64,000 nt of DNA from Mobula birostris (taxonomy: Eukaryota), in contig NC_092382.1 of the NCBI RefSeq assembly GCF_030028105.1, forward strand, positions 31,971,792 through 32,035,791, written 5' to 3'. This document shows, piece after piece, positions 8,993-64,000 of the stretch. Both the position numbers and the translations under genes were made by a program. Each line of letters opens with the position of its first letter. The stretch's first letter is position 1. Below the pieces are notes generated by a model. The model searched no databases. It worked only from the letters and a program-made list of their open reading frames with translations, and was not told where the DNA came from.

Positions 8993-10237
8993 AACAGTAA
9001 CTTAACCACGGGACACTTTACAATGACCAATTAATCTTCACGGACTTTGGATAGGGAGATCTACAGATTTATTACACATGACGCCGGACTTCATCTCCGA
9101 ACTCGCAATGCTAACAGCACCTGAGTAAAATAGGGTTGATTGAGGCTTAAGAGCAGAGAGACTATGTTATTTGCTGCTTCGCTTGGAAACACTAAAGCTT
9201 ATTAGGTATTTTCTAATCCCTGGATAGACACTCCTGCCTTCCATCCTCGTATCCCCACCACTCTGTCCAAATGGGTTTGTGCCTCTGGGACACTAATGGA
9301 AGCTGAATACGAGCAGACTGACACAATATTCAGTGGGCGAATACGTATCCCTTGCTCACAGCGAGCTCCGTGACGCTAAGGGTGAAATTAATGGAATTAT
9401 TCCCACTTGGCCGCTTGTGCCGCCGAACCGGCCTCACGCCAAGTGAATAACGGAGCTATGCTGAGGGTTGAGAGCGAAACACTACGATATTTCATGTTTC
9501 TGAGCGTACCAAGTGGTCAGAAAACTATCGGCCCATGATGGGGGTCAGGACGGTATAGAAATTGTATCACACAGCAACGTTGAGAGGGAATATGTTGGTG
9601 GCAGTGTGGAGGTGGCAATTACGGGATGTAAGGTCTGGGTTGAGCTGAGAAAACTAAGCTGCTTTGATACTAACGAGTCAAAACCTTCAGTGATATCTTC
9701 ATCGTGAGGATGTGAAACGCAGAGAGAATCCTACGGAGACATGGGGAACAATTATACAGAAACAAGGAAAGACATTCTGAACGATGGCTTTTTCCTCGAT
9801 GGTTGTCCATCCTCTGTGTCAATTCACCTGCCAACTATCCTCTTCCGTTCACCAGTGACGTCATCTGAGGAAACAACACACCATTTATGTTGACTACGTC
9901 AGCAACCCGGAAGTGCTGCTGCTGGTGAGGAGAATTACGAGGTGACGATTTTCGAATCTGTGCTAAAACATCGTGACAATGCAACCTTGAAAACAACTAG
10001 TATATTTCATATAGATACAGGCCCAGAAAATTTGTTCCTTTCAATATCAATAAAACGCTGTATGATACCGCCTAACTCGAATCTTGCGTTGTTACGTGTC
10101 TCGAAACTGCTAATCACAGTGTAGTATATACATGGACACAACCATCGCACTGCATAACTCACAGACCTGAAATTAGTAGATACGTTTCCTTTACAAGTGA
10201 CACTGTGTATCGTCAGCCCAATATTCCATTCACATAC

Positions 10238-10281
10238 CTCCTCAGATCACTGTAAACAGATCGGTCCTGCAGCACAAGTCC
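10238..10281 (-). pseudogene. Gene A former cytoplasmic exon 4 (GLVLQDRSVYSDLR), splice acceptor mutated
   Basis: Aligns to 48411-48454; acceptor reads AACTG instead of AACAG; lies downstream of the premature stop. Confidence 0.75.
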
Positions 10282-10933
10282 CAGTTAATGTGAGGAAATC
10301 AGCATGATTAGCAGCATTTTGTTATTAAAAGCATTTTGTGATAGAAGAGAACAGCAATAATATTGAAGAGTATTTGCGCTTATTTAATAAATTCTGTCTG
10401 AAAGTAACACGGAATAGTCAGACCATGATGAAAAGAGGATCAGAGACAGACAGTCATGATCCCCAAGCGAAAGGGAGCATAATCCCTTGTCATTCGCTTC
10501 TCTTCCTTCAAAAGATCAGAGTGATATTTGCAACTTTCCAGTCCTCAGAAACAATTCCACAGCAATCTGTAGCTTGGAATATCAGTAATTATCCCTCTAC
10601 TACCTCTTCAGTGGCCCATTTCAGAATGGTGTGGTGCAGTTAATCTTGTCCATTTAGTCCAGGTGATTCATCTACCTTCAGCCCTTCCAGCTTGCCTTGC
10701 ATCTTCTCCTTATTAGCCACTCCCGTGTCCTGACACTGTCAGACTGATAGTTTGCTCCACAGCAAAGATTGACACATAATACTTCATGAATGGATCCGCC
10801 ATGTCTTTGTCCCCAACTGCTGCCTCTTCGATTTCATTTCCGCTATGGAATGTCTCACCTCATCGTCTGTCTCTTACTGTGTAAAGTGGAAACAATTACT
10901 TCAAGAAGGCATTGACGCAAATGTAGTCCTTAC

Positions 10934-10975
10934 CATATAAGTGGAATTTCAATCATCTGCATTGTTCCTTGTGCC
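10934..10975 (-). CDS. CEACAM-like gene A, cytoplasmic exon 3 with premature TGA (GTRNNADD*NSTYM)
   Basis: 42 nt, CAG/GTAAG; TGA at 10951-10949 where gene B has GGA. Confidence 0.8.
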
Positions 10976-12165
10976 CTGGAACGAGAACATGAAGATTTCT
11001 ATTGAAGCGTTTAACCAAGTGCACAACAATTGTATTCTGACTCTGCACATAAAAAAGGGAGTATCAATTTTCACATTCACTGCTGATTGGAGCATATTGC
11101 ATCATTCGCCGTTCGACAGACTGCGTGTTTCGGATTCAGTGTCAGAAAAGTACATATTTTCTCTGACACCAGGAACGCTTCCGGACAGCATTAGATGATT
11201 TGTAAGCATTCAGCAATAAGGGTAGCATGATGAATGTTATTTGACGAGGAGCTCGCCTTCAGAACCAAACATCTTGAGAGATTATTCCTGATCAGAATTT
11301 GCACGTCACAGAGAGGGGATATGGACTTGCGTCCTCAGGATGCTGACCGTATTTGCTATTTCTCTAAACGTTCACATAGATCATCGCTGATCACAGTCCG
11401 GCAGGTGCAGACCTAACCACCGCTTCCACTTGTGTCTTTCCCGCTTTGACCGGACATTTAAAGAGGATCCTTCATGAAATATATTCCACTCAGAGTAAGA
11501 GCTGTCTTTTTTGCATTGTACAACAATTATGTATTCTGCAGAAACAGCAAATAACTCGGGTGAAGAAGTTCTGCAGGTGCTGGAAATACGGAACAACGCA
11601 CACAAAATGCCGGAGGAACCCAGCATTTCAGGTAGCATCAATGAAAATTAATAAACATTCGACGTTTTGGGCCGAAAGCCTTCTGCTGGACTGGAAAGGA
11701 AGCAGAAAGGCGCCAGAATTTAAAAAAAAACAATAAGTGGGGGAGAGGAAGGTTGTCTATGTGGAAGGTGAATGGTGGACCTGGAGAGTGGGGAAGGTAA
11801 AGCGCTGAAGGAAAATGAATCCGATTACAGAGGAAACTGGACCATGGTAGAAATCGAAGATGGAGAGTCTCCGGGGAAGTTCATGGACATGTGAAGATAA
11901 GAGATAAGAGTCGAGGGCGAAGAATGGAACAAGAGGGAAGTGAACAAAAACACGGGTAGGAAAAGGTCGATGTTCGTTGCTATCTGGTTTGGGTCTACTT
12001 TGAGGCGTTGTTCCTCAGTTAACTGGAAATGTGAACCAGTGATCTACATAAATGGCCAATCAGTGCCCAAGGGCCCGATGGACGCTACCGATCACATTAC
12101 CGATGTTCTTATCTTTCCTTCGCAAAACAATGACTGAGACCATGAACATAATACAAACATCCAAC

Positions 12166-12230
12166 CTGCTCATTCCTTGGGAAATTTTCATAGTTTTGCG
12201 ATGCGTCCGCAGCGTTTGTATCCAAGGTGC
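12166..12230 (-). CDS. CEACAM-like gene A, cytoplasmic exon 2 (STLDTNAADASQNYENFPRNEQ)
   Basis: 65 nt, CAG/GT, phase 1-0; paralogous to 45961-46025. Confidence 0.8.
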
Positions 12231-12628
12231 CTGTGGGATCAAAACAGATATGTCACAACGGTGAAGAGCAGTAGGGACCGTTGTTAGTACTGCAGACGTC
12301 AATCCGGGCCCCAAACAAAATGCAACCATAGCGTGAGCCACGTCCCATCCAGTTGTCAGAAACACGTAATCTCTTGTACAGAAGACCAGTAACTGAGGGC
12401 CTATATTGATCAATATGAAGGGAAATTAAGTCCACTAAACTACAATTCCATCTCCCCCTGATATTGTAATGTTCAGTTCAAAATTTAAACTTTTTTCACT
12501 GGGATACCAAACGATAGGCAAGATAAAACGACCTCCAGCTTGTGTGCGCTATGAGCTTCCATATTTAAATGCAATGTTTAGATTTCCGTGGGCTCAGTAA
12601 TAGAACAGTTCAAACGGGGTTCACTCAC

Positions 12629-12684
12629 TCTTTCTTCTGGAATTGGTGCTCGTGTCGTGTTTGGATTGCGGTGGATCTTTGATG
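12629..12684 (-). CDS. CEACAM-like gene A, cytoplasmic exon 1 (IKDPPQSKHDTSTNSRRK)
   Basis: 56 nt, AG/GTGAGT, phase 2-1; paralogous to 44925-44980. Confidence 0.8.
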
Positions 12685-13432
12685 CTGAATGAACAGAAAC
12701 AAAGGTCAAAACATGAATTCGGCAGGATGTCACTTTCCTTCACTGATCCACCGAATGAGAACGACCCCTATAATTCCATTTGATAATTTCTATTCATTCC
12801 TTGATACTGTTCCTGTTATTAGATACCCTGTTCCAGTCCTACTCGATCTCAACAACAGTGACCATAATGGGTTATGGATAGAAAACGTTCTGGAATTTCG
12901 GACCTCAGCTTTCCAGGAGAAAGTGACACACCTGCATTAATGAACGCAGCCCACTTTCAAACAAATGCTCACACTTCAGGAAAGCCACGTCCACGTACAA
13001 GATAATACTGATTCTGTCCACGGATGTCTCCTGATCTGTGGCATAATTCTAGAGTTGCTAATCAATTTTAGCTCCTCCTTGGGTAAAGAGGTTTAAAATG
13101 CCAACAGGTGGAGACCGAGCAGTCCCCATTTTCCTTAAACACCGGGGACGTGCGGATTGACCAACTGCTCCACTGTGACTGAAACTGATTGTTATCGACA
13201 GGGTAATATTCAGTCATAGATCCGTTATCTCACGGAAAAGGACCTCAGTGCCTGGTGAGGATCTACACCAATGCACCGTCCGTGTTCCATTCCTGAACCT
13301 TGGACATGAATCGTCACCATTTAATTATCCATTTCCCTCTTAAATTCCGCAGCTGATCCGCCCTTAGGAAATCTGCAAACAGAGCTTCCCCTGTTCCAAC
13401 AGCAAACTGCTGGCAAACTAACCATTCACCCT

Positions 13433-13595
13433 ACACACATCAAAGTTGCTGGTGAACGCAGCAGGCCAGGCAGCATCTGTAGGAAGAGGTGCAGTCGACT
13501 GCACCTCTTCCTACAGATGCTGCCTGGCCTGCTGTGTTCACCAGCAACTTTGATGTGTGTTGCTTGAATTTCCAGCATCTGCAGAATTCCTGTTG
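13433..13595. mobile_element. Penelope-type palindromic element with 14-bp target-site duplication
   Basis: Near-perfect loopless palindrome 13433-13559 centred on GTCGAC; TAACCATTCACCCT at 13419-13432 and 13596-13609. Confidence 0.8.
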
Positions 13596-14220
13596 TAACC
13601 ATTCACCCTGACTTGTAATGGCTGCCTCTTTCATCTTGAGTCTCTAGACTTTAATCCTGTACTCAGTGATGTGGGAGAGCAAATTCAAACTCACATATGA
13701 ACTCCGATGTTTATGTGTTTCAGTATGAACTCCACTCAAAATGCCTTCCAGGAAACAGCGTGCTTCCAAAAGCACAATCTGTCCCTGAACCCAGTATCCG
13801 CTCTGGTATATTTCTTCTGCACCATTTCTGAATCCCTAGCTTGCCTCCTGTCATATGCTGAGGAGGCAGGAAAAAATAACTTTCAACACGGCCAATAGTT
13901 CTGTTCCTGCTATGCACGCATTCCAGACTTCAATAATTGTTGTTTCGGAAACAAATCCCAGGACCCGTTGTGCCGTGTGAAACACTTCCTCGTCCTGCAT
14001 CTCCGCATCTAAAAAGGGTCTGTTCATGTTCCCCCACAAATAATGCCTGACTCGCCAATTTCCTCCAGCTCCAGTTTGTGTCCCCTTCTTCGTTCACCGG
14101 CTGCATCGCAAATTCGTGTTAAAGCTTCCAATAACCCACTTCTGCCAAAAAGAAAAATCTTCCGCACTAAATGAAAGTAGAGGTGACATTCGGGAAAAAA
14201 AAATAAAAACATGCATTTAC

Positions 14221-14341
14221 CCCTCAGTGTTCCTGGTGATCAACCATCCACTGACTACGCCGATCATGGTCACGCCAAGGAAAAATACCACAATGGCCAC
14301 GATTGCGCCAGAGCTGAGGATACATTTGCCATCTGTTTTTT
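14221..14341 (-). CDS. CEACAM-like gene A, transmembrane exon
   Basis: 121-nt phase 1-2 exon EKTDGKCILSSGAIVAIVVFFLGVTMIGVVSGWLITRNTEG; paralogous to 42937-43057. Confidence 0.85.
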
Positions 14342-14717
14342 CTGTTAACACACAAAGAAAATGAATATCTTACATTCCGAGAACACGTCTTTATCAGTGA
14401 CAAATTCATTTTCACAGCAATTTGACTGGGTCAGTTTAGAGTTGTATATTGTCTCACAAGGATTACCCCCCGAATGAAAGCGTTAACATGCGTTGAACGT
14501 TTAATTGGTCTGGGTGTGCAGTCGTTTGAATTTACAAGGATTGTCGGGGGGTGGGGGCGTGGAGGGAACCGCATTGAAACTTTCAACGAATGTTGGAAGG
14601 TCTAGACAGAGTAGATGTGGAAAGTGTGTTTCATGCAGTGGGAGTGTCTCGGATATGGAGGCACAACCTGAGAATAGAGGGGTGTCAATTTAAAATAGTG
14701 ATGCGCGGATATTTCTG

Positions 14718-16597
14718 CATAAGACCATAAAACAAAGGAGCAGAAGTCCGCCATTCGGCCTATCGAGTCTGCTCCGCCATTTTATCATGAGCTAATCCAT
14801 TCTCCCATTTAGTCCCACTCCCCCGCCTTCTCACCCTAACCTTTGATTCCTTGGCTACTCAGATACCTATCAATCTCTGCCTTAAATGTGACTTAGCCTC
14901 CACTGCCACCGTGACAACAAATTCCATAGATTCACCACCCTCTGGCTGAAAGAAACTTCTTCTCATCCCCGTTCTGAATGGGCGCCCTTCAATCCTTAAG
15001 TCGTGGCCTCTCGTACCAAACCCCGCCATCATGGGAAACAGGTTTGCCACATCCACTCTGTCTATGCCGTTCAACATTCGAAATGTTTCTATGAGATCTC
15101 TCCTCATTCTTCTAAACTTCAAGGAATACAGTCCGAGTGCGGATAAACTTTCCTCATATGTTAACTCTCTTATTCCTGAAATCATTCCAGTGAATCTTCT
15201 CTGCACCCTCTCCAACGTCAGCACATCCTTTCTTAAATAAGGAGCCCAAAACTGCCCACAATACTCCAAGTGAGGTCTTACCAGCGCCTCATAGAGCCTC
15301 AAAATCTCATCCCTGCTGCTATACTCTATTCCGCAGGAAATGAATGCCAACATTGCATTCGCCTTCTTGACCACAGACTCAACCTGGAGGTTAATCTTAC
15401 GGGTTTCCTGGCACGAGGACTCCCAAATCCCGTTGCACCTCAGAATTCTGAATTCTCTCCCCATTTAAATAATAGTCTGCCGGTTTATTTCTTCTGCCAA
15501 AGTGCATAATGATACACTTTCCAACATTGTATTTCATTTGTCACTGCTTTGCCCATTCTTCCAAGCTATCCAAGTCTCTCTGCAGACTCTCCGTTTCCTC
15601 AGCACTACCGGCCCCTCCACCCTATCTTTGTAGCATCAGCAAACTTAGCCACAAAGCCATTTATTCATTAATCCAAATCGTTGATGTGCAACGTAAGAAG
15701 AAGCGGCCCCAAGACGGACCCCTGTGCAACACCACTGTTAACCGGCAGCCAACCAAAATAGGATCCCTTCAATCCAAATCTCTGTTTCCTGCCAATCGGC
15801 CAACGCCCTATCCATGTATGTAAATTTCCCGTAATTCCATGGGCTGTTGTCTTGTTAAGCAGCCTCATGTGTGGCACCTTGTCAAAGACAGTCTGAAAAT
15901 CTAAATATACAACATCCACCTCATCTGCCTGGTCTAGTCTGCTGGTAATTTCCTCAAAAAATTATTATAGGTTTGTCAGGAAGGATTTTCCTTTCAGGAA
16001 TCCATGCTGAGTTCTGCCTATCTTGTCATATGCCTCCAGGTGCTCCGTATCCGTAACCTCATCCTTGACAGCAGACTCCAACAACTTCCCAACCACCGAT
16101 GTCAAGCTAACAGGTCTATAATTTCCCTTTTGCTTTCTTGACCCCTTCTTAAATAGCGGAGTGACATTTCCAATCTTTCACTCCTCCGGAACCATGCCAG
16201 AATCTATCGACTTTTGAGCGATCATTGCTAATGCCTTTGCAATCTCCACAGCTACATCCTTCAGAACACGAGGGTGCATTGCATCTGGTCCGGGAGATTT
16301 ATCTACCTTTAGACCATTCAGCTTCCTGAGCACTTTCTCTGCTGTAATTGTGACTACGCACATTTCACTTCCCTGCCACCCTTGAGTGTCCGGTATACTG
16401 CTGATGTCTTCCTCAATGAAGACTGATGCAAAATACTCGTTCAGTTCCTCCGCCATCTCCGTATCTCCCATTACAATTTCTCCAGTATAATTTTCTATCG
16501 GTCCTATATCTACACTCAACTCTCTTTTTCTCTTTATATACCTGATAAAGCTTTTAGTATCCTCTTTCATATTATTTGCTAGCTTCCTTTCATAGTT
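14718..16597 (-). mobile_element. 5'-truncated CR1 LINE in gene A intron 2
   Basis: Identical to 493-2372. Confidence 0.9.
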
Positions 16598-17149
16598 TCA
16601 GATTCCTCGCTTCTGCTGAAAATACCGTGAACATCCCAATAATCTGTATTGTTGACTTCACAAACTTCTATATGGTCAGGCCAAGGCCTTCCACGCTCCG
16701 AGGATAACTTGAACAATCTCCCATTCCAGTAGCATCCTTGTGAATTTTTTCAGCGCCTTTAAGGCTGAATGAAATTCTTCTCAGAATTCTTTCTGCCTAT
16801 TCGAGGAATGATAATGCAATTCCTAACCATAAGCTTCAAGGTGAATTTTATGTCCCATCAAAACATCTAACCCTACAGTAAAATTCGTCATTCGCGTCAT
16901 ATCACCTCAGCGGGAATCTTGATGGCCTAAGCCCGCAAGCGTCGACTCGACCCTGGCTCCTGGAATGCAGTCCCAAAACTTACTAAAGCTAATTGCACCT
17001 CTTTCAGATGTTTGGGGGGACCGGAGCTCCCATTGTCATTCGGACTGACAAAGGGCTGAGGCCCGGAACGTCGACCGTACCTCTTCCTATAGATGCTGCC
17101 TGGCCTGCTGCGTTCCACTAGCATTTTGTGTGTGTCACTCAAAGATGGT

Positions 17150-18536: not shown

Positions 18537-18854
18537 CAATAACACGCAGAAAGATGGTCGCTGAGGTTCGGGAGCCATTAGTTGGAACGATCGTCACACG
18601 GTATTCCCCATTGTCCAACATGTTCACCGACTTCAGCAGAAGCGACCCATTGGAGATGAATACATAAGCCCGCGATGTGTAGGCCTTGTCAACGGTCACG
18701 GTCTGGCCGATCCACTGGGCGATTTTTTTCCCCTTAAAAATCCAGTTTCCACTGATGACATTGCCCGACGGCCGCACTGAAAAGAGCGCATCTCCCCCGA
18801 CGGTGACATTTATCTGGCTGTGCTCAACGAAAATGGTAAACTGCTGAGACTCAC
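18537..18854 (-). CDS. CEACAM-like gene A, exon 2: IgV (N) domain without the canonical disulfide
   Basis: 318-nt phase 1-1 exon, polypyrimidine/CAG acceptor and GTAAGT donor. Reads GESQQFTIFVEHSQINVTVGGDALFSV...SRAYVFISNGSLLLKSVNMLDNGEYRV...LRVI, with NGSLLL and DxGxY motifs and no Cys, as in CEACAM/HEPACAM/CD2-type V domains. Confidence 0.9.
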
Positions 18855-19056: not shown

Positions 19057-19108
19057 CCGCCGTTATGCAGAGACAAAGAACGAGCGCTGCGAAGGGCAGT
19101 CCCGACAT
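19057..19108 (-). CDS. CEACAM-like gene A, exon 1 (signal peptide MSGLPFAALVLCLCITAG)
   Basis: ATG at 19108-19106, hydrophobic leader, phase-1 GTGAG donor; same peptide in genes B and C. Confidence 0.85.
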
Positions 19109-19218: not shown

Positions 19219-20104
19219 ATCAGATATTCTGTACTCTGCTCAAAATCCAGATCAATTGTTGTGTGCTGTTATACAAATATCTGCTGCTGTGTTGAATCCG
19301 ATAATAATCTCAAAGAGAGTTTTTCTCACCCATCGATATGAACGGAAAGTGAGTGAGTAAAGCGAGCGTCGTCCACGCGATCTCGAGAGAGAGGCGCCTG
19401 TCTCTGTTACACTGGGAGAGTGAGCCACATTTCCTGATCTCCATTGAAGAGCTCGGTAGTCCTGATCTGAAAAGCCGGAGCTGATTGGATCGCACAGCGA
19501 GAAGGCGGAGACTGAACGAACATAAAACGCTGTTGGAACAGGAGGCTATTCAGCCCTTGATATTCTCCCATGGTCCTCTATCAGCTCACGTAGCATTTTT
19601 CTGAAAACTATTTTCCTACGAGATTGAGAGACTGGTCGGGTGTTGGTGCCGCATTAATTTTTGAACCGACAAACAACAATACCAAGGAATTGATTGCATC
19701 TTCACGAAGCAGAAACAGGGAGAACACATCAGCCCTCATTCAAGGGTCGACGGTAAGGGTGAGCAGTTTCACGCTCCTTCCAAACGATCTCTGCTTTGCC
19801 TCACATATTTTTGCATTCACAAAGAAAGATCCGTCAGCGGTTGTATTCTACTACGTGATTGAAGAAATTTGGTATTGGTATGTCACTCAAAATCGCGAAC
19901 TACACAAGATGGGAAGCATTCTGACTGGCGCCATTGCCGTCTGGTTAGCAGGCTCCAATGCACAGGATCGGCAAAGATTGTAGAGGGTTGTGTACACAAT
20001 CACATCCATCACGGTACAAACCTCCCCATAACCCAGGACATCTTCAGAAGGTGGTGCCTTAACGATACCAGGCACAGAATTAAGGGCTACCAACGTCCGT
20101 GACA

Positions 20105-20561: not shown

Positions 20562-20619
20562 TCTTTCCTAACATCTGGACTACAGAGTGTCGTGGGAGCT
20601 GAATTCTGAAGGAAGGCAA

Positions 20620-28249: not shown

Positions 28250-28425
28250 AGAACTTCACACTTATCTCCCCGGGAATCTTGATTTGATTAGCTTTATCTG
28301 AAGACAGAGATATCCTGTCATTATCATGGATGGGTCTGTTATCCTCTAACCACGTTCTTCCCTGGATCCTGCCCTTGCGTCAAAAATGAATACAGCCCTA
28401 TTTCCACGGTCCTCCATTATTTTAA
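28250..28425 (-). pseudogene. Fragment of a further IgC2 A-type exon
   Basis: RTWLEDNRPIHDNDRISLSSDKA matches RTWFKDNQPI...RIFTSPDKA of genes B/C; frameshifted. Confidence 0.55.
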
Positions 28426-29046
28426 ATGAAGAGTTAAAATTGCTCTGGCAAGTCCGGGACATTATTCGCTGTAGCGTCAAATGAGCATCTCCGAAAATTT
28501 GACTTATACATAAATCCAGCAGTTTGACATAAATCCGAGTGTGATAGAGAAGTTCGTGACCGAAGGTCGAAGGAGATATTAGCTTCAAACTTTCTGCACA
28601 ATCACTCAAAGAGTTGACCTGCATGTACCTGTAACGAGAGCTGTATACCTCATCTCCTTCTACCTTAGGCCACGAACTTATCAATTACCCATGCTGTGGT
28701 CACCTTCTGGAGGTCTAAGATCCGTATGCTCCACGACGGCTGGATTATGTTTGTAAATGTCAGAGGGGACTATGCTGAAAAATAAATGTGCTGGGTTTTC
28801 TAAAATTGACTCTTTCTACATTAGGCCACGAATTTATCAATAACCCCTCGTAAATCCCTTCCGGACCTCGAGTATATCTATAACTCTGCTCCATCTTGCC
28901 TGTCCCTGACGAACAATTTGTTGTTTTTTTTCTCTCTTTGATGACTAAAGTAGACAGAATAGAACAGCGTGAAATTTGCAAAATAAAATTGCTCTGAAGT
29001 TGAACCGGCCGATTGAAGTGTAATATCGACAGAAACTTTTACTTGC

Positions 29047-29314
29047 CCTGTACTGTGATCTTTACAGAAATGCTGTTGTGTTTCCTGGTTATTTTTTTGT
29101 CAGCCTGACAAGTATACTTTCCATTATCAACGTTGTTTTCTAAATCGGTGGTGTCGCTCTGTCCTGTCTGCGCATGATGTGTCCCATTGCGCCATCTATA
29201 GTCAGCACTGGGAATTGACTGGGCGGAATAATTTATTTCAGACTTGGAACGATATCTGTCGCAGGTAGACCCACCTGCGGCACCTTCAACAGAAATCTAG
29301 ACGGTATGTTGTTT
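29047..29314 (-). pseudogene. Decayed CEACAM-like IgC2 B-type exon
   Basis: YSAQSIPSADYRWRNGT...TGQ...DNGKYTCQA...SVKITVQG resembles CEACAM B domains; first Cys to Tyr, in-frame stop near the 5' end, GC donor. Confidence 0.7.
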
Positions 29315-29369
29315 CTGTTATCAGTTATGCCGAATTTAATTTGAAGTAATCAGCTACATGCACACTTAC

Positions 29370-29636
29370 AGTTAACCTGCAGGTAGATTCCTGCGATGTC
29401 GCTGGTATAATCATCGCTAACGGGACATTTGTTCTTTCTTGTTTCAGTTCTGTGAAGGCGGGTTATGTTCAGATTAACTTTTTCTGAAGACAGAGATATT
29501 CTGTCCTTATCCTGGGTGAGTTTGTTCATGTTCTTCTTTGAAATGTTCCCTTGTTTGTCACAAGTGAATTCAACCTTACTGTTGCTTTCCACGTGACTTA
29601 AATTGCTGCTGGTTACACGGTCACGAGACACGGGCT
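29370..29636 (-). pseudogene. Decayed CEACAM-like IgC2 A-type exon
   Basis: ACAG|AG CCC GTG start and T|GTAAG end; EPVS...VEFTC...DRISLS...KC...YLQVN; core Trp and DxGxY lost. Confidence 0.7.
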
Positions 29637-30009
29637 CTGTAAATAGACGTGAAAGAGGAATGGAACTAATCCATTTTACTGCATTCTTGTCATACCAGTT
29701 GGGGCTCTGTAGACCAAATTACGATCGTGACCGACATATGGGTCTTAATGGCAAATGAATTGCAGCTTCAGAACACGAGGGCGCGCGGCTTCAGTTCTGC
29801 TACGTCATGGGGGGGGGGCGAGTGTTACGTTTTTCGATGAACAAAGGCTCTGCTGCTAAGTTAACACATTTCACGTCACATGCAGGTGATCATATACCCG
29901 ATACTGATTCTGATTATGCACTCTACTGCCCTATGTGCGATGCTAAATTGTTTGCACTAGAGGGAGTGTCAAAAACAGAGCGTCATTGTTGTCAAATACA
30001 TGTTCCGCC

Positions 30010-31224: not shown

Positions 31225-31260
31225 AGTCGACGTTTCAGGCCGAGACCCTTCGTCAGGACT
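31225..31260 (-). ncRNA. Minimal type I hammerhead ribozyme motif (second copy)
   Basis: Reverse complement AGTCCTGACGAAGGGTCTCGGCCTGAAACGTCGACT; G-U pair at the base of stem II. Confidence 0.6.
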
Positions 31261-33895: not shown

Positions 33896-33947
33896 ATGTC
33901 GGGACTGCCCTTCGCAGCGCTCGTTCTCTGTCTCTGCATAACGGCGG
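33896..33947 (+). CDS. CEACAM-like gene B, exon 1 (signal peptide)
   Basis: ATG...GCG G|GTGAG; MSGLPFAALVLCLCITAG. Confidence 0.85.
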
Positions 33948-34146: not shown

Positions 34147-34464
34147 GTGAGTCTCAGCAGTTCACCATTTTCGTTGAGCACAGCCAGATAAATGTCACCG
34201 TCGGGGGAAATGCGCTCCTTTCGGTGCTGCCGTCGGGCAATGTCAACAGTGGAAACTGGATTTGTAATGGGAGAACAGTCGGCCAGTGGATCGGCCAAGC
34301 CGTGTCTGTTGACCCTGCCTACACATCGCGGGCTGAGATATTCATCTTCAATGGGTCGCTTCTGCTGAAGTCCGTGAGCGCGCTGGACAGTGGGGAATAC
34401 CGTGTGACTATGGTTCCAGTGAGTGGCCCTCAAACCTCAGCGATCGTCACTCTGCATGTTATTG
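34147..34464 (+). CDS. CEACAM-like gene B, IgV (N) domain exon
   Basis: 318-nt phase 1-1 exon within ORF 34110-34472; NGSLLL and DSGEY motifs; single unpaired Cys (WIC). Confidence 0.9.
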
Positions 34465-40150: not shown

Positions 40151-40426
40151 AGCCAGTAACTGGGGTTACTGTGGTGGCCAATGATTCCACTCCCCTGGAA
40201 AACCTCGATACCATCGCACTGAGTTGTGACGCGTCGGGCCCTGTTCAGACACGGACATGGTTCAAGGATAACCAACCCATCCGGGAAAACAGAAGGATAT
40301 TTACATCTCCCGATAAGGCGAAACTGACTATAATCAGTGTTAACAGAAACGACGCAGGGGCGTACAAGTGCATCGCATGCAACCCAGCCAGCAGTGGCTC
40401 TGGAGAGACCTACGTGCAAGTTTACT
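40151..40426 (+). CDS. CEACAM-like gene B, IgC2 A-type domain exon
   Basis: 276-nt phase 1-1 exon EPVTGVTVVANDSTPLENLDTIALSC...WFKD...LTIISVNRNDAGAYKC...VQVY; Cys/Trp/DxGxYxC pattern intact, like CEACAM A domains. Confidence 0.9.
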
Positions 40427-40501
40427 GTAAGTACACAGTTAATCAACCGCGTTCATTTGTATCGGATATTACTATACTCGACAGGTATTCTCATTTTAGA
40501 G

Positions 40502-40760
40502 TTGGGCCAGAGAAGCAGAACATTCGACCGGAGAGTCCGGGTGTTTGGAATATTGTGTCAAACCTGACATTAACTTGCTTTGCTCGGTCAGTCCCTTGGG
40601 GTATGTATGCATGGTACAACAGGAACAAGCGCCTGCGGACAGGGCAGGAGCTCACCGTCGCGTCAGTGCGCTCGGTTGACGTTGGTTATTATGGATGTTA
40701 CGTTTTCTAGAGGATTTACCAAGAGGAGTTTTAATCTTACTGTCCAGGTTTATGCACAAG
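40502..40760 (+). pseudogene. Gene B IgC2 B-type exon, frameshifted (pseudoexon or soluble-isoform exon)
   Basis: GPEKQNI...LTLTC...YAW...DVGYYGC, then an extra T gives TAG at 40708-40710; length 259 (3n+1); weak GAG acceptor with a competing TAG 2 nt upstream. Confidence 0.75.
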
Positions 40761-42936: not shown

Positions 42937-43057
42937 CAAAAACAGATGGCAATTGTACCCCCGGCTCTGGCGCAATCGTGGGCATTGTGCTTGGTTTATT
43001 TGGCATGGGCCTGATCGGCGGAGTCAGTGGATGGTTGATCGCGAGGAAAACTGGCGG
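42937..43057 (+). CDS. CEACAM-like gene B, transmembrane exon
   Basis: 121 nt, KTDGNCTPGSGAIVGIVLGLFGMGLIGGVSGWLIARKTGG; resembles the GAIAGIVIG...KTG pattern of mammalian CEACAM1 TM. Confidence 0.88.
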
Positions 43058-44924: not shown

Positions 44925-44980
44925 GATCAAAGATCTGCCACAATCGCAATACGGAGCGATCACCAATTCCGGAAGAAAGA
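44925..44980 (+). CDS. Gene B cytoplasmic exon 1 (IKDLPQSQYGAITNSGRK)
   Basis: 56 nt, TTCAG/GTGAGT, phase 2-1. Confidence 0.82.
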
Positions 44981-45960: not shown

Positions 45961-46025
45961 CCACCTCGGATATAACCACTCTGATCGCATCGGGATCCTA
46001 CGAAAATTTCCCAAGGAATGAGCAG
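45961..46025 (+). CDS. Gene B cytoplasmic exon 2 (TTSDITTLIASGSYENFPRNEQ)
   Basis: 65 nt, CGCAG/GTTGG, phase 1-0. Confidence 0.82.
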
Positions 46026-47155: not shown

Positions 47156-47197
47156 GGCGCAGGTAACAACGCACAAGATGGAAACTCCACTTACACG
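47156..47197 (+). CDS. Gene B cytoplasmic exon 3 (GAGNNAQDGNSTYT), first ITAM tyrosine
   Basis: 42 nt, TTCAG/GTGAG, phase 0-0. Confidence 0.82.
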
Positions 47198-48410: not shown

Positions 48411-48454
48411 GGACTGATTCTGGGCAACCGATCTCTTTACAGTGATCTGAAGAG
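48411..48454 (+). CDS. Gene B cytoplasmic exon 4 (GLILGNRSLYSDLK), completes the ITAM
   Basis: 44 nt, AACAG/GTAAGT, phase 0-2. Confidence 0.82.
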
Positions 48455-49666: not shown

Positions 49667-49697
49667 TTTAACATGAATTGTTTATTTATTTCCTCAG

Positions 49698-50742
49698 ATG
49701 ACCTCACTGGTGAACAGAAGAGGATGGTTGCCCGGGACTTCACACATCAGAAGGACAACCATCGTGGAGGATGCAGCTTTCAAAACGTCTCTTACTTTTT
49801 ATATATAACCGTTATCCATGTTTCTGTCATATGTCTCTCGAGTGTGACATTTTCACTTCGAGATATCACTGAAGGTTGTGACTCTCTTTTTTCTATCGTA
49901 GCGGCTTAATTGTCTCGCCTCAGCGCAGACTCCTGCTTCCCCATAATAGGCACCCTCGTGCTTCCACCAACATTGGACCTCTCAGCTTTGCTCTGCGATA
50001 TGAACTCTATAATCTCATTGCCCACATCATAGGCGGTTCCGTTGCTCAAGACATGTTTCGTCAGATCGGGAACATAGCAGAGTGAGACTCTCAGCCTTCA
50101 GACTAGCATCAATTTTCTCTCGTCCTGGAGCCTGGTGCAGCAGCGGAAAGGGTCACGTGACAAAAATTCCAATGATTTCATCCTTCCCCTCCCGGGCCTT
50201 CATATTAGCAATGTATCAGTATTCGCTCACTAAATACTGTGAGATATGATGTGAGTTTCGTCTTGTCGAACGACCAGATTTTTACCTGACACCCAGCCCT
50301 ATTTCCCTCTGACACTTGTTTTGGGATCATTCCCGACCGCAATAGACACCTTGATGCCTTCTTATACATCCAGCAGTTGCCAGAAACCACACCTCCGCCT
50401 TCCGCCGCACACCGTGGTCACAGAGGCACAAGTACATTTGGACAGCGTGGGTGGTGGGGGGCGGGAGGGGTGTGTCGTTTGTGCACGAACATTCACAGCA
50501 GAAGGGATTTTCCAGGCACTGGGAAATACAGAGTTCGCGGTCGGGTTTGGAAAATAAGCAACAATATAACGTAAACAAGGAGTCTTGGAAAGAAAAATAA
50601 AACACTGTGGTGACGAATTCACAAAGAATTATCAAAGTCTGACCCAGACCATGAACACGAATAGAACATTAATACCAGGATAACGATTCTCAGGTGTCTG
50701 AAATATTTACAATATGCAACACTCGACCGATGATTGAATAAA
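49698..50742 (+). other. Gene B last exon: final Arg base, TGA 49699-49701 and 3'UTR (approximate end)
   Basis: TTTCCTCAG|ATGA is conserved in gene A; AATAAA at 50596-50601 and 50737-50742. Confidence 0.65.
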
Positions 50743-53460: not shown

Positions 53461-54284
53461 TATTCATTTCATGTATGATCCTGCATCGCTCTGATTCGGA
53501 GGTTGAAGGTATCTTGAACAAGGCAAAGAGTTCAACGTGAGTGTTCATGAAGTTAAAATGCAGTAGTGAATGTGTTTGTACTCACGGGGTATTGCCTAGC
53601 CTTGGAATTCCCTATCATTGACAGCTCTAAGGGTGGTGGTGATTGTGGGGGTGTAGTTGGTGCCGGTAAATTGCGGTTGTCACTGAAAAGGCCGTGTTTA
53701 GAGATAAAACTTGCCAGTTATCGGACTTTCTGGAGTTGATCTCTTACGGACCGGCAGCATGGATGAGATACCAAGATCAGATTGGACGTGATCTTCACGC
53801 TGGGTTGAGCGGAAGGAAAGGGCTGGACAGTCTATTCCTTGCTCTCATTTTTATCGACTTCAAAATGAAGCGGGGATCTGAACTTTCAGCAGTGACCTTG
53901 TCAATCTCTCTTAGCCTTTTTTTCATAACGGTTGCTTAAGGAATCGCGAAATCGACACATTTTCATCCGGCGGCGTGAGATCTCAACGCATTTTGACCGA
54001 ACCTGAAAGTAATGTGCGCTGGATTTGATGTGTAATTTCGTTCAGACCCTCCGATACTCCAACAGTGTTTCGTACCTTCGATCTCCAAAGTCTTTGTTAC
54101 ACATATCACCTTGATATTTGTCTTCAGAGCAAGGTTTAGTTCAAAGTTCAAAGGTGAAAATTTCAATTTTAATGTCAGAGGAATAGTGAGGTTGAGTTCA
54201 CGGGTCCGTGGACTGCTCAGAAACCTGATTGAGAAGCTGCAGGTGAATCGTTGAGACTGGGTCTCCAGTGTCATGTTCCTCCTT

Positions 54285-54420
54285 CTGGCTGTTAGTAATG
54301 AGACAAGAGCATATCCCGGTTGTTAGTAATGAGACAAAGCCGTATCCCGGTTAGTAATAAGGAGACGGGAGGATCTCCCGGATGGTAGTCATGAAAACGC
54401 AGCATATCCCGGATGGTCGT
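54285..54420 (-). repeat. Short copy of the same 31-bp minisatellite
   Basis: TAGTAATGAGACAAGAGCATATCCCGG units. Confidence 0.7.
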
Positions 54421-55003
54421 CAATTATGGTGAGGCTTGGATGTGATTGTGTGTGCAACACTCTGCAATCTTTGTCGATCCTGTACATTGGAGCCTGAAGA
54501 CCAGAATGCTCTCCACCTTGCATGTAAATATATATATTTCCCAGTCTCTGGTGACACACTGATATCCAATCTCTTCAGATAACTCATAGAATCCAGCCGC
54601 TGACGTGCCTTTCTTCGTGAATGTATAAATATGTGAGGCCAAGCAGGGATTCTCTAGAAAGGAGTAAAAGCTGCTCATGTCGGCGGCTGAGAGACACTCT
54701 CTTTGAGATCATTGTCGGATTCAACACAACAGCAAATAGTTGCAGAACAGCACACAAGATCTGATCCAGATTTGAGCAAAGCACGGATTCTCTGATCGGG
54801 ATCTGATCCAATCATGACAGAAGAGTATCGCAGACTGAACAGCCTTCTGCTTCTACAGCGTTTAAAGTTCATTCATTCTCTTCCTTCTCACTTTCCCATC
54901 CAATCAGCTCCGGCTTTTCGGATATCGGATTTTCCGGAGCTGGGAATACGTCTCAGTCTCCGAATGTAACAGAGACAGGCGCTGGTCTCCCGGGATCGCG
55001 TGG

Positions 55004-55046
55004 ATGACGTTCACTTTACTCTCTCTCTTTCCCTTCATGTCGGTGG
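55004..55046 (+). CDS. Possible alternative upstream leader exon of gene C (MTFTLLSLFPFMSVG)
   Basis: ATG, hydrophobic peptide and phase-1 GTGAG donor inside the duplicated promoter unit. Confidence 0.3.
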
Positions 55047-55156
55047 GTGAGAGAAACTCCCTGTGAGATCATTATCGGATTCAACACAGCAGCAGATATT
55101 TGCAGAACAGCACACAAGGTTTGATTCAGATCTGAGCAGAGTACAGATTCTCTGAT

Positions 55157-55266: not shown

Positions 55267-55318
55267 ATGTCGGGACTGCCCTTCGCAGCGCTCGTTCTCT
55301 GTCTCTGCATAACGGCGG
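55267..55318 (+). CDS. CEACAM-like gene C, exon 1 (signal peptide)
   Basis: Same as gene B exon 1. Confidence 0.85.
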
Positions 55319-55482: not shown

Positions 55483-55800
55483 GTGAGTCTCAGCAGCTTA
55501 CCATTGTCGTTGAGCACAGACAGATAAATGTCACCGTCGGGGGTGATGCGCTCTTTTCGGTGCGGACGTCGGGCAATGTCAGCAGTGGAAACTGGGTTTT
55601 TAAAGGGAAAACAATCGCCCAGTGGATCGGCCAAACAGTGTCTGTTGACAATGTCTACTCATCGCGGGCTGCGGTATTCACCTCTAACGGGTCTCTTCTG
55701 CTGAAGACGGTAAGCGCGCTGGACAGTGGGGAATACCGTGTGAATATGGTTCCAATTACTGGCTCCATGACCTCAGCCACCGTCACTCTGAATGTTATTG
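55483..55800 (+). CDS. CEACAM-like gene C, IgV (N) domain exon
   Basis: 318-nt phase 1-1 exon GESQQLTIVVEHRQINVTVGGDALFSVR...NGSLLLKTVSALDSGEYRV...LNVI. Confidence 0.9.
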
Positions 55801-56059
55801 GTAAGTGAGACACAATCGTGAGATCTCGGATTATAACTTTCATTCTAATCCTGATATGATAGAATACAATGTAACCCTTACTGTTCGCTGCTGGATGGCG
55901 GACCATTCCGAATGAAAACTAAACCGAGCAAACAAAACTTAGTTTGAAGTTCTTCTCGGAAAGGCATCGGCGATGATCGGTGTCTGTGACTGCAAACCCT
56001 GGCCTATCGTGAACACTGCCAGTTCCACTTTTCGGACGGCTCAACTTTCAGTCATAATC

Positions 56060-61895: not shown

Positions 61896-63132
61896 ACTCA
61901 CTGGCAGACAGGCCAAATTAGCTCACCTTTTGGCTTTTGACAATCGGCCACTACTTTATCCATGATAAATCTTTCCTGCAATACAATTGACTGGCAACAA
62001 GTAGAGCAGCCTAATGTATGGCACCTTGACATGGCGTTCTGCAAATTAAAGAAAATCGACCGATTCTCCTTTCCATATCTTACCTGTTATTTCTTCAAAT
62101 AATTCCAACAGGTTTGTCAGGCAAGACTTCCCCCTGACTGCAGATTATTTTATCATGTGCCTCCAAGTACCTTGATACCTCATCTTTAATAATTGACACC
62201 TTTCCAAACAGTTCTGGCCAACACCCCTCTCATGGGTCTGTAATTCAATTTACCCCATTGTAAGACTGATACATATGACTTCAGCTTCGAATTCACAAAC
62301 TTCAGGGTGAATTCGATCATATTTTAAACACTTTACTAAAGTTACTTGTTTTCGTTTCCCTTAACATCTCTAATCAATTCTGGATCCGAATACATGATTC
62401 TGTACCGGGCTCAATCGCGAGCTGCCCTGAAACACCAGATCGCCCTGCTGGGATCCAGCACCAACCTGATTGTCCCAATCTATCTTCATTTTGAAATCCA
62501 CTATGACTTATTGAAACATTCCCCCTTTGACATGAATTTTGTATCACACGTCTTAATTTTAGGCGAAATCATCATTCTGTTTGGCGGTCTCTGTGCAACT
62601 CCCATCAGGGACTTTTTTTTACCCTTGCTGTTCCGCAGGTCTCTGTACATCGGTTTAATACATTCCGACCCACTTTCACCCCTTTCTAATAATTTGACGT
62701 CATTTTTTACCAACAGAACAAAGCCGATCGCTTGTCTTCACGCCTGTCCTTTCGATACAATATGTATCCTTGGACATCAAGCTCCCGGCAATAATCTTTC
62801 CGCCGTGATTCAGTGTTCCTTACAATATTATATGACTAATGTTGTGAGTCTAATAAGATTTGTAAAAACAGAGTATAGGGGGAGTCCAGCTTATTCCCAT
62901 TTGTTCCAGAGGACAGTTAAACTCTCGCCAAGTTACTTAGTCCCCCTAAGTAACAGCAGTAAAACTTCAAACTCTGCTGGAGTTTCATTCGGTCTGCGAT
63001 CTGACCAGATATCGAAACACATGGCGATAAGAGATGGGAATGGCGACGATATTGAGTTGGCGACACACAAATATCCTGAACGTGCAGATAAAACCAATCG
63101 TAAAACCATTTTTATTCTCATTGTATTTACAG

Positions 63133-63384
63133 AGCCAGTGACCGGAGTTATTGTGGTGACCAATCATACCATCGCACTGAGTTGTGACGCGTCGGGCCCT
63201 GTTCAGACACGGACATGGTTCAAGGATAACCAACCCATCCAGGAAAACGACAGAATATTTACATCTCCCGACAAGACGAAATTGACTATAATCAGTGTTA
63301 ACAGAAAGGACGCAGGGACGTACAAATGCATCGCCAGCAACCCATTCAGCAGTGGAGCTGGAGAGACCTACGTGCAAGTTTGCT
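63133..63384 (+). CDS. CEACAM-like gene C, IgC2 A-type exon with an in-frame 24-nt deletion
   Basis: 252 nt, phase 1-1; lacks DSTPLENL relative to gene B; core Cys, Trp and DAGTYKC retained. Confidence 0.8.
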
Positions 63385-63459
63385 GTAAGTACACAGTTAG
63401 TCAACCGCGTTCATTTGTATCGGATGTTACGATACTCGACGGGCGATCTCATTTTATAG

Positions 63460-63700
63460 ATGGGTCAGAGAAGGACAGAATTTGTACCGGAGTGTCCAAA
63501 ATTGTGTCAAAACAGACATTAACTTGATATGCTCTGTCAGTCGCCTCGGGAACATATGCATAGTACAACGTAAACAATCATCGGCAGAAACTCACCCTGG
63601 TGTCAATGAGCTCGGTTGACGTTGGTAATTGCAGATGTCAGGTTTTTTAGTGGTGTAACCAAGAGCAGCTTTAGTCTGACTCTCCAGGTTACCGCACAAG
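63460..63700 (+). pseudogene. Gene C IgC2 B-type exon, decayed
   Basis: Cys to TGA (63525-63527), Trp to TAG, and the same +1 T frameshift as in gene B; length 241 (3n+1). Confidence 0.8.
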
Positions 63701-64000
63701 GTGAGTGAATGTGTCTCTCACTAGTGTATACAAAAACACGATGGTCAAAGATCCAAACATTTCCCCAATCTCGAACTCCCCATTTATCACTGCATACCTT
63801 CAGTCCAGTTCATAAGTGGCCGGTCAGAGTATAATCATAGTAATAACGTTTCCATGGCGATGCCATAAACGTTGAATGTTGGAGAGTGATCTAACAAAAC
63901 TTCCCCATTCAAAAGGCACCAACTAATTTATATTCACCAATTATGTCCAGAACTGGTGAGTTCTATTCCTGTTTTGGGAAAACCGTTAGTGACAGGGCAA

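What the first reader, a model, noticed from the sequence alone, without database searches (positions are those of the whole stretch)
9861..64000. Cryptic cluster of CEACAM-like receptors with differently wired signalling tails (possible paired-receptor system in a probable cartilaginous fish)
Seen: three paralogs (A on -, B and C on +) with an identical leader peptide and 318-nt disulfide-less IgV exons. A and B share phase-compatible 121/56/65/42/44-nt TM and tail exons. B is IgV-C2-TM-ITAM. A is IgV-TM with its ITAM removed. C continues past the window. Known: mammalian CEACAM1 (ITIM) and CEACAM3 (ITAM) form a paired system in which similar N domains are coupled to opposite signals and bind pathogen adhesins. 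Inference: this is a lineage-specific expansion that behaves similarly, with an activating receptor next to a non-activating sibling. I cannot tell without a search whether it has already been described.
Basis: partly seen in the sequence, partly recalled or inferred. Interest (0 to 1): 0.85.

Follow-up and report, generated by a model that had tools for sequence, protein, structure and literature searches.

The report
Manta ray CEACAM-like receptor gene cluster
Three neighbouring giant manta ray genes encode CEACAM-type surface receptors with activating tails; they are real but already computer-annotated, and the copy without an activating tail simply carries a premature stop codon.

Summary
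The sequence observation holds. Genes A (minus strand), B and C (plus strand) share an identical 17-residue leader, a 318-nt cysteine-pair-less IgV exon and, in A and B, 121/56/65/42/44-nt TM and tail exons.

The cluster is not cryptic. Every B exon translation matches Mobula birostris RefSeq XP_072130945.1 exactly. C matches XP_072130949.1. A matches two 212/213-aa database models.

The family label fits. Its IgV profile hits CEACAM1 first among solved structures (2e-13, against 1e-7 or weaker for other families). The tail has the CEACAM-type ITAM, split by a phase-0 intron, plus a YxNx motif.

B and C both encode ITAMs. Skipping the 44-nt exon removes it in annotated isoforms.

A's loss is a TGA codon, seen in spliced RNA-like contigs of one sample. 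Two other samples show GGA. No run covering A's acceptor shows the reference defect. Cross-mapping from paralogs cannot be excluded.

No ITIM partner lies in the window. The only manta ITSM-type member found is 59-61% identical in the N domain and sits on another scaffold. In M. hypostoma, ITSM and ITAM members share 81-90%.

Earlier notes of this scan on this same window covered A's and B's tails.

The parts
19057..19108 (-). Gene A leader exon (ATG at 19108; 52 nt, ends in phase 1)
   Evidence: Its translation is residues 1-17 of database model P0229.
18537..18854 (-). Gene A IgV (N-domain) exon, 318 nt, no canonical cysteine pair
   Evidence: Residues 19-123 of P0229 and P0226.
14221..14341 (-). 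Gene A transmembrane exon, 121 nt. The part from 14226 upward is duplicated at 100% identity at window 1-116.
   Evidence: The TM-to-56-nt junction is seen in RNA-like contigs of X5 and X6.
12629..12684 (-). Gene A 56-nt cytoplasmic exon (His where B has Tyr)
   Evidence: Junctions on both sides are seen in X5 and X6.
12166..12230 (-). Gene A 65-nt exon with a YENF (YxNx, Grb2-type) motif
   Evidence: Junctions 12230|12629 and 10975|12166 are seen in X5 and X6.
10934..10975 (-). Gene A 42-nt exon. In-frame TGA at 10951-10949 where all paralogs have GGA. The first half of the ITAM follows the stop.
   Evidence: TGA in 240.7 of 240.7 depth in X6. GGA in 538.8 of 538.8 in X5 and 34.9 of 34.9 in DNA run X1.
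10238..10281 (-). Gene A 44-nt exon (second half of the ITAM, intact coding sequence). The reference acceptor reads TG (10283-10282).
   Evidence: Position 10283 reads as an AG acceptor in X5, X6 and X1. The 42-to-44 junction is seen in X5 and X6.
9000..9864 (-). Gene A last exon (one base completes Arg, then TGA; 3' UTR). It is also used directly from the 42-nt or the 65-nt exon.
   Evidence: Depth is high over 9000-9904. The 9864|10934 junction is seen in X6. An X8 contig covers 9000-9866. The lower end was not determined.
33896..33947 (+). Gene B leader exon
34147..34464 (+). Gene B IgV exon, 318 nt
   Evidence: Residues 19-123 of XP_072130945.1. AlphaFold2 model with pLDDT 95.1 and an IgV strand pattern.
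40151..40426 (+). Gene B IgC2 exon, 276 nt, phase 1 to 1
40499..40747 (+). Decayed second C2-type exon of B (in-frame stop at 40708-40710 and a frame change before its end). It is absent from both RefSeq isoforms. The limits are approximate.
42937..43057 (+). Gene B transmembrane exon, 121 nt
44925..44980 (+). Gene B 56-nt exon with a membrane-proximal SQYGAI (ITIM-like) motif
45961..46025 (+). Gene B 65-nt exon with YENF
47156..47197 (+). Gene B 42-nt exon. It ends with the first two residues (Tyr-Thr) of the first YxxL, followed by a phase-0 intron.
48411..48454 (+). Gene B 44-nt exon. It completes YTGL, then 7 residues, then YSDL.
   Evidence: It is skipped in RefSeq isoform X1, XP_072130944.1.
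49698..49810 (+). Start of gene B's last exon (Arg plus stop after the 44-nt exon; a 36-residue alternative end when the 44-nt exon is skipped). The 3' end was not determined.
55267..55318 (+). Gene C leader exon
55483..55800 (+). Gene C IgV exon, 318 nt
63133..63384 (+). Gene C IgC2 exon, 252 nt (8 codons shorter than B's). TM and tail lie beyond the window.
   Evidence: Residues from 125 of XP_072130949.1, whose tail holds an ITAM.
28287..29655 (-). Orphan, degraded C2-type exons (29655-29371, 29248-29048, 28376-28290) between A and B. They look like a relic of a fourth copy.
   Evidence: The conserved Trp of the first is lost, and the first Cys of the second is replaced.

Best explanation
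The window is part of a large, RefSeq-annotated cluster of CEACAM-family receptor genes on a 112-Mb chromosome-scale scaffold of the giant manta ray, Mobula birostris.

Shown:
- Each gene encodes a type I membrane protein with a CEACAM-type, disulfide-less IgV N domain.
- A has no IgC2 domain; B and C have one.
- All have an uncharged TM helix and a tail built from micro-exons.
- The tail carries a YxNx motif and an ITAM whose first YxxL is cut by a phase-0 intron.
- B and C encode the complete ITAM, so by motif they are activating receptors.
- Annotated isoforms that skip the 44-nt exon, and spliced RNA-like contigs with the same junction, lack the second ITAM tyrosine.
- A is a member of the IgV-TM-ITAM subtype. 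In the reference haplotype it carries a nonsense codon just before its otherwise intact ITAM.

Inferred:
- On clustering, Src-family kinases would phosphorylate the two ITAM tyrosines and recruit Syk-type kinases. The YxNx motif would recruit Grb2.
- Alternative splicing therefore tunes signalling within each gene.
- A's stop is best read as a young truncating variant, probably still segregating, of the kind expected in a birth-and-death immune gene family. It is not an evolved counter-receptor.

Any inhibitory counterpart is a separate ITSM-tailed CEACAM1-like gene on another scaffold.
For: Identity and annotation:
- 8 of 8 B exon translations are exact, ordered substrings that cover residues 1-324 of 325 of XP_072130945.1.
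- C's leader, IgV and C2 exon translations are in XP_072130949.1, which ends in an ITAM.
- A's leader, IgV, TM, 56-nt and 65-nt exon translations are in the database models P0229 and P0226, which end at or before the stop.

Family:
- B's IgV against the PDB: the first 14 of 37 listed sequences are CEACAMs (best E 3.5e-4). The first other family (JAM) has E 0.28.
- A 25-row family profile: the top 5 hits are CEACAM1 (2.3e-13 to 1.7e-8). Then come titin 1.4e-7, CD48 1e-6 and JAM-A 1.4e-6.
- The C2 exon's best hit is CEA at 2.6e-33.
- 51 of 66 full-length relatives carry CEACAM or PSG names from NCBI. So do 7 of 10 close hits and 7 of 10 distant hits that I looked up.

Tail: exon phases and motifs match the published description of CEACAM ITAM tails, namely a YxxL split by a phase-0 intron and a conserved YxNx (PMC5112662, legend text read).

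Transcription: RNA-like contigs show exon-shaped depth and the junctions TM>56, 56>65, 65>42, 42>44 and 42>last on the A tail.

Expansion:
- The profile search found 335 proteins at E<=1e-3 and 37 at E<=1e-30.
- At least nine further RefSeq genes of this type lie on the same scaffold.
- A's N domain is 86-91% identical to four further paralog genes, and C's is 98% identical to another gene.
Against: - Pfam finds only sub-threshold V-set/I-set matches for the N domain (17-23 bits, cut-offs 23.7-26).
- Foldseek does not single out CEACAM. TIGIT and PD-L1 rank first and CEACAM1 ranks 21st.
- NCBI's names are automatic and inconsistent. The same genes are also called HEPACAM-like, VSTM5-like or uncharacterized.
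- Synteny with CEACAM marker genes, and a tree with curated reference sequences, could not be done.
- The read evidence is contigs only, laid at 95% identity. At least two near-identical paralogs with GGA exist: XP_072130958.1 and XP_072132138.1. X6's TM-exon contig equals the former's TM exactly, and X1's equals the latter's. The GGA and AG readings may therefore be cross-mapped paralogs rather than alleles of A.
- B and C were not tested with reads.
- ITAM function rests on motifs alone. The acidic residue at -3 of the strict ITAM pattern is absent in B.
Confidence: 0.8

Rival explanations
1. A and B are a functional paired-receptor system inside this window. Similar N domains bind the same ligand, B activates through its ITAM, and A has been shaped by selection into a non-signalling or decoy partner.
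For: - A and B lie head to head, with an identical leader and homologous tails.
- A's reference sequence and its database models lack the ITAM.
- The TGA-bearing exon is transcribed and spliced in sample X6.
- The stop lies 15 nt from the exon's end, so transcripts that join the 42-nt exon directly to the last exon could escape nonsense-mediated decay (inference).
Against: - The N domains are 73% identical, below the 80-93% of published pairs.
- There is no inhibitory motif. A's tail is simply cut, and the ITAM-coding sequence downstream is still intact.
- GGA, not TGA, appears in contigs of 2 of 3 samples. The acceptor defect appears in 0 of 3 runs.
- Closer relatives of A (86-91% N identity) all keep the ITAM.
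- IgV dN/dS is 0.69-1.20 with no significant clustering on the CC'C''FG face (23 of 54 against 15 of 51 sites, p=0.22).
Confidence: 0.1
2. The family is not CEACAM. It would be a separate elasmobranch IgSF family (CD2/SLAM-, HEPACAM- or VSTM5-like) that shares only the generic disulfide-less V domain and a convergent ITAM tail.
For: - PDB E-values for the single N domain are weak (3.5e-4).
- CD48, JAM-A and CD2 appear lower in the same lists.
- A Receptor_2B4 Pfam match appears at E 0.02-0.03.
- One distant hit is named Ly-9-like, and some relatives are named HEPACAM-like or VSTM5-like.
- The fold search is not discriminating.
Against: - With a profile, CEACAM1 leads by five to six orders of magnitude over any other family.
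- The C2 exon aligns end to end with CEACAM A-type domains.
- The tail's exon phases and motifs match published CEACAM ITAM tails.
- ITSM-tailed multi-domain members with the CEACAM1 layout exist in the same family.
- Two papers trace CEACAMs to cartilaginous fish.
Confidence: 0.07
3. A's lesions are assembly errors, and A is an ordinary intact ITAM receptor.
For: - The acceptor TG is contradicted by all 3 runs that cover it.
- GGA appears in X5 and in DNA run X1.
- The region shows assembly trouble: a 2442-bp block is repeated at 100% identity next to a gap.
Against: - TGA is present in three spliced contigs of X6, summed depth 240.7, with no alternative base.
- The database holds two models ending at or before the stop.
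- This rival could hold for the acceptor base alone.
Confidence: 0.05

Closest known systems
Mammalian CEACAM3/CEACAM4/CEACAM19-type receptors (single IgV N domain, TM, ITAM or ITAM-like tail). The architecture is recalled from general knowledge. CEACAM3 as the ITAM-like partner of CEACAM1 is stated in PMC5112662 (abstract and passages read).
   Same: - Disulfide-less IgV N domain, single-pass TM and a tyrosine-based activating tail.
- Gene A's subtype (IgV-TM-ITAM, 233 aa in paralogs) has the same layout.
- The N domain matches CEACAM N domains best.
   Different: - About 25% sequence identity to human N domains.
- The expansion is independent and batoid-specific.
- B and C add one IgC2 domain.
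- No ligand or cell type is known.
Xenopus Ceacam group 1/2 ITAM members and paired receptors (Zimmermann and Kammerer 2016, PMC5112662; passages and the legend of Additional file 1 read; the file itself was closed)
   Same: - The first YxxL of the ITAM is split by a phase-0 intron.
- A YxNx Grb2-type motif lies upstream.
- The genes form clusters of rapidly duplicating paralogs.
- In M. hypostoma an ITSM-tailed member shares 81-90% N-domain identity with five ITAM members. That is more than the 77% it shares with the ITSM member of M. birostris. This is the pattern that paper describes.
   Different: - In this window all three genes are of the ITAM type.
- The M. birostris ITSM member found is 59-61% identical in the N domain and lies on another scaffold.
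- Gene conversion was not tested here.
Little skate CEACAM homolog known from ESTs (Chang et al. 2013, PMC3628338; Pavlopoulou and Scorilas 2014, PMC4079198; passages read)
   Same: A cartilaginous-fish CEACAM with the IgV + IgC + ITAM prototype.
   Different: Those papers report only an EST-level homolog. Here there is a multi-gene genomic cluster with exon structures, isoforms and a truncating variant.

Membership tests
CEACAM family | N-terminal IgV-like domain without the canonical intradomain disulfide | tested here: met
   Val stands at both canonical Cys positions in A, B and C and in 25 of 25 aligned family rows. The AlphaFold2 model has pLDDT 95.1 and an IgV strand order.
CEACAM family | N domain closer in sequence to CEACAM N domains than to other IgSF families | tested here: met
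   Single sequence: the first 14 of 37 PDB hits are CEACAMs. Profile: CEACAM1 at 2.3e-13, best other family at 1.4e-7. This covers solved structures only. The fold search was not discriminating.
CEACAM family | IgC2-type (A/B-like) domains after the N domain in multi-domain members | tested here: met
   B's C2 ORF: Pfam Ig_3 7.9e-18. The exon aligns over residues 7-84 with CEACAM A-type domains, and CEA is the top hit at 2.6e-33.
CEACAM family | Exon plan: short leader exon, the rest of the signal peptide in the N exon, one exon per Ig domain, phase-1 introns (plan recalled from general knowledge) | tested here: met
   The leader exon is 52 nt (phase 1). The N exon is 318 nt and the C2 exons 276 and 252 nt, all phase 1 to 1.
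CEACAM family | Cytoplasmic ITAM whose YxxL is split by a phase-0 intron, with a YxNx motif (as worded in PMC5112662) | tested here: met
   B: YENF lies in the 65-nt exon. The 42-nt exon ends after the first two residues (Tyr-Thr) of YTGL in phase 0. The 44-nt exon supplies GL, 7 residues and YSDL. Compared with the paper's legend text only.
CEACAM family | Location in the conserved CEACAM chromosomal neighbourhood (markers such as ATP1A3, PAFAH1B3, CNFN, LIPE named in PMC3628338) | not testable with these tools
CEACAM family | Clade membership in a tree with curated reference sequences | not tested
   No curated reference sequences could be brought in without typing from memory. The tree holds only database relatives with automatic names.
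Paired receptor system (CEACAM1/CEACAM3 type) | Partners with opposite motifs (ITIM/ITSM against ITAM) | tested here: not met
   No ITIM/ITSM tail exon was found in the window (tblastn with 155 proteins, among them P0021 and P0025). B and C encode ITAMs, and A is a cut ITAM tail. Short exons can escape tblastn.
Paired receptor system (CEACAM1/CEACAM3 type) | Highly similar ligand-binding N domains (80-93% in Xenopus pairs, PMC5112662) | tested here: not met
   B against A is 73% and B against C 71%. A, B and C against the M. birostris ITSM member XP_072122198.1 are 59, 59 and 61%. The feature is met elsewhere in the family: in M. hypostoma the ITSM member against ITAM members is 81-90%.
ITAM | YxxL/I, 6-8 residues, YxxL/I in the cytoplasmic tail | tested here: met
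   Met in B isoform X2 and C isoform X1. Not met in A's models, B isoform X1 or C isoforms X2 and X3. The strict form with D/E at -3 is not met in B.

The most novel reading that the evidence does not exclude
Rays run the CEACAM paired-receptor logic in two layers.

- Between genes: an ITSM-tailed CEACAM1-like gene keeps its N domain matched to same-species ITAM paralogs. In M. hypostoma this is 81-90%, against 77% to the sister species' ITSM member. That would push CEACAM inhibitory/activating co-evolution back to cartilaginous fish.
- Within genes: a 44-nt micro-exon acts as an ITAM on/off switch. Including it gives a full ITAM. Skipping it gives a tail without the second tyrosine.

Truncating variants such as A's TGA would be a third route to the same outcome.
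Probability: 0.3. Interest if true: 0.6.

Novelty: new member of a known kind. Interest (0 to 1): 0.35.

Why it matters
CEACAMs are a textbook case of pathogen-driven receptor evolution, but for cartilaginous fish the papers I found report only a skate EST. This window shows that a manta ray has a multi-gene CEACAM cluster with the same tail design as frog and mammalian ITAM members. It documents isoforms that drop the ITAM and a transcribed stop-codon variant.

It also points to a possible inhibitory/activating N-domain match in a sister species. That makes the age of CEACAM paired receptors testable. For this particular finding the result is mostly corrective: the genes are already annotated, and the proposed A/B pair is not a pair.

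Tried and rejected
- Pfam on the N domains gave only sub-threshold Ig matches.
- Foldseek against the PDB confirmed an IgV fold but could not assign a family.
- A tail-only protein search (residues 160-233 of P0194) reached only 14 batoid proteins. It gave no link to tetrapod tails.
- I tested whether the residues that vary among A, B and C cluster on the CC'C''FG face. They do not significantly (23 of 54 against 15 of 51, Fisher p=0.22).
- dN/dS of the IgV exon was 1.20, 0.69 and 0.99 for A/B, A/C and B/C. This is compatible with relaxed or diversifying selection and not decisive.
- In the N-domain tree, the three ITSM rows needed 3 changes, and 0 of 200 bootstrap trees made them one clade. 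The well-supported branches alone do not exclude one origin. I therefore rely on the pairwise identities.
- I first read the GGA and AG readings as clean allelic polymorphism of A. I weakened that after finding two near-identical paralogs whose TM exons equal the variant contigs.
- Two brute-force splice-site scans were too noisy to define exons. Homologous proteins did that instead.
- One literature search was badly framed and returned no relevant paper. One search replaced it.
Additional file 1 of PMC5112662, an alignment of CEACAM ITAM exons, could bear on tail homology. I saw only its legend.
- I made no joined (spliced) protein of my own. Models were compared exon by exon with database proteins.
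- Reads were laid on A's tail only. B and C have no read test here.

Full report
What is in the window. The 64-kb window (GC 0.46) has N runs at 2443-2455, 25710-25847 and 38223-38402. It is mostly LINE-type transposon remains. A tblastn search with B's IgV ORF found exactly three strong hits: 34161-34469(+), 18840-18532(-) and 55497-55805(+), at 100, 72.8 and 70.9% identity. The next hit had E 0.02. Self-comparison shows that A's downstream half (9322-14715, minus strand) is paralogous to B's (42576-50241). The 5' parts of all three genes align with each other.

Exons. Each gene starts with a 52-nt leader exon that encodes the same 17 residues (51-52 of 52 nt identical). A 318-nt phase 1-to-1 IgV exon with a GTAAGT donor follows. 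By comparison, intron 1 is 65-75% identical and the IgV exon 86%. With homologous proteins as guides the remaining exons are:
- A: TM 14341-14221, 56 nt 12684-12629, 65 nt 12230-12166, 42 nt 10975-10934, 44 nt 10281-10238, last exon from 9864.
- B: C2 40151-40426, TM 42937-43057, 56 nt 44925-44980, 65 nt 45961-46025, 42 nt 47156-47197, 44 nt 48411-48454, last exon from 49698.
- C: C2 63133-63384, then the window ends.

B also has a decayed second C2-type exon (about 40499-40747) with a stop and a frame change.

Gaps. The 38223-38402 gap sits in B's IgV-to-C2 intron. B's annotated protein runs straight from the IgV to the C2 exon. The flanks are colinear with gene C, and C's matching interval holds no family exon. 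The 25710-25847 gap lies in intergenic transposon DNA. No exon touches a gap, and the gap lengths remain unknown.

Whose genes these are. A profile of the three IgV domains found 335 proteins at E<=1e-3 in 1.84 billion representatives, 37 of them at E<=1e-30. A full-length search with a stingray relative gave 66 proteins. All named ones come from rays and sawfish, and 51 of the 66 carry CEACAM or PSG names from NCBI.

All 8 exon translations of B are exact substrings, in order, of XP_072130945.1, 'CEACAM7-like isoform X2' of Mobula birostris (325 aa). C's exons are in XP_072130949.1 to XP_072130952.1. A's exons are in two 212/213-aa models of the same 112,019,601-bp contig. These are listed without names, as the tool does for the window's own proteins. 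So the window is giant manta ray and the cluster is annotated. At least nine more genes of this type sit on the same scaffold.

Family. Pfam sees only sub-threshold V-set/I-set matches in the N domain. Against solved structures, B's N domain hits CEACAMs in the first 14 of 37 rows (best 3.5e-4). A 25-row family profile puts CEACAM1 first (2.3e-13 to 1.7e-8), ahead of titin, CD48 and JAM-A (1e-7 to 1e-6). The C2 exon hits CEA best. The AlphaFold2 model is a confident IgV (pLDDT 95.1), but Foldseek ranks TIGIT and PD-L1 above CEACAM1. The fold therefore does not decide the family.

The tail is the best family mark. It has YENF in the 65-nt exon and an ITAM (YTGL, 7 residues, YSDL) whose first YxxL is cut by a phase-0 intron. 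This is as described for CEACAM ITAM tails in PMC5112662 (legend text). Two papers place CEACAMs in cartilaginous fish on the strength of little skate ESTs (PMC3628338 and PMC4079198, passages read). I found no paper on an elasmobranch CEACAM cluster.

Signalling tails. B isoform X2 and C isoform X1 end in a full ITAM. B isoform X1 joins the 42-nt exon straight to the last exon and loses the second tyrosine. C isoforms X2 and X3 end in tyrosine-free tails. B alone has a membrane-proximal SQYGAI motif.

In the reference, A has TGA where every paralog has GGA, eight codons into the 42-nt exon. It also has TG for the acceptor of the 44-nt exon. The ITAM-coding sequence behind the stop is intact.

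Reads. No run is on record as RNA. Three small runs guessed to be RNA (X5, X6, X8) and one DNA run (X1) of the same species label hold the A tail. Laid on 9000-14400, the three RNA-like runs show depth peaks on the predicted exons. X5 and X6 show the junctions TM>56, 56>65, 65>42 and 42>44, and X6 also shows 42>last. The exon plan is therefore transcribed.

Position 10951 reads as TGA in X6 (240.7 of 240.7, three spliced contigs). It reads as GGA in X5 (538.8 of 538.8) and in X1 (34.9 of 34.9). Position 10283 reads as an AG acceptor in X5, X6 and X1, and never as the reference base.

Caution is needed here. These are contigs laid at 95% identity, and contigs drop variants. X6's TM contig equals the TM of paralog XP_072130958.1, and X1's equals that of XP_072132138.1. 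Both paralogs have GGA. The TGA exon in spliced RNA-like contigs is the firm result. Whether GGA is an allele of A or a cross-mapped paralog remains open.

Is it a paired system? Not within the window.
- B is 73% identical to A and 71% to C in the N domain.
- No ITIM/ITSM exon was found.
- Among 137 retrieved proteins with this N domain, none with an ITIM/ITSM-type tail exceeds 69% identity to A, B or C.
- The M. birostris ITSM-tailed member is XP_072122198.1, with the motifs TEYAEI and TDYAEV. It lies on a 171-Mb scaffold and is 59-61% identical in the N domain.

At family level the idea has some support. In M. hypostoma the ITSM member's N domain is 81-90% identical to five ITAM members, but 77% to the M. 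birostris ITSM member. The stingray ITSM member nests among stingray ITAM members in the tree, with moderate support.

Verdict. The specific A/B pairing is not. The genes are already predicted in RefSeq but I found no study of them.

Noticed in passing
window 1-2442 and 14226-16667; N run 2443-2455: A 2442-bp block, including 116 nt of gene A's TM exon and a LINE fragment, is repeated at 100% identity at the window's left edge. It ends exactly at a 13-N gap. It looks like a falsely duplicated contig end, but it could also be the edge of another A-like copy.
   Followed up: partly
window 28287-29655, minus strand: Three orphan C2-type exon relics lie between A and B, with conserved Trp and Cys residues lost. 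No IgV, TM or tail belongs to them.
   Followed up: partly
window 33615-33720 (B), 54949-55051 (C), 19380-19436 (A): Degenerate upstream copies of the promoter and leader segment. B's copy keeps an ATG, a 12-codon hydrophobic ORF in phase 1 and a GTGAGG donor, so it could serve as an alternative first exon.
   Followed up: no
window 20088-20578, 32664-32959, 54283-54420: A tandem repeat array lies upstream of all three genes at matching positions. Its period and role were not examined.
   Followed up: no
window 13424-13596: A short inverted-repeat element has extreme contig depth in every run (about 64,000 to 1.4 million, against about 20-50 nearby). It has copies at 17045-17135, 31129-31260 and 36341-36443, so it is a very high-copy small repeat.
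   Followed up: no
window 9698-10265 and 12165: Contigs in X5, X6 and X8 join the 65-nt exon to the inner part of the 44-nt exon (10265|12165). They then join 10238 to 9698 inside the last exon, with non-canonical ends. This may be a paralog's transcript that lacks the 42-nt exon, as in M. hypostoma P0200. It remains unexplained.
   Followed up: no
proteins P0203 and P0174, P0023, P0154, P0159, P0173 (Mobula hypostoma): The ITSM-tailed member and five ITAM members share 81-90% N-domain identity across different scaffolds. This makes them a candidate paired-receptor set.
   Followed up: partly
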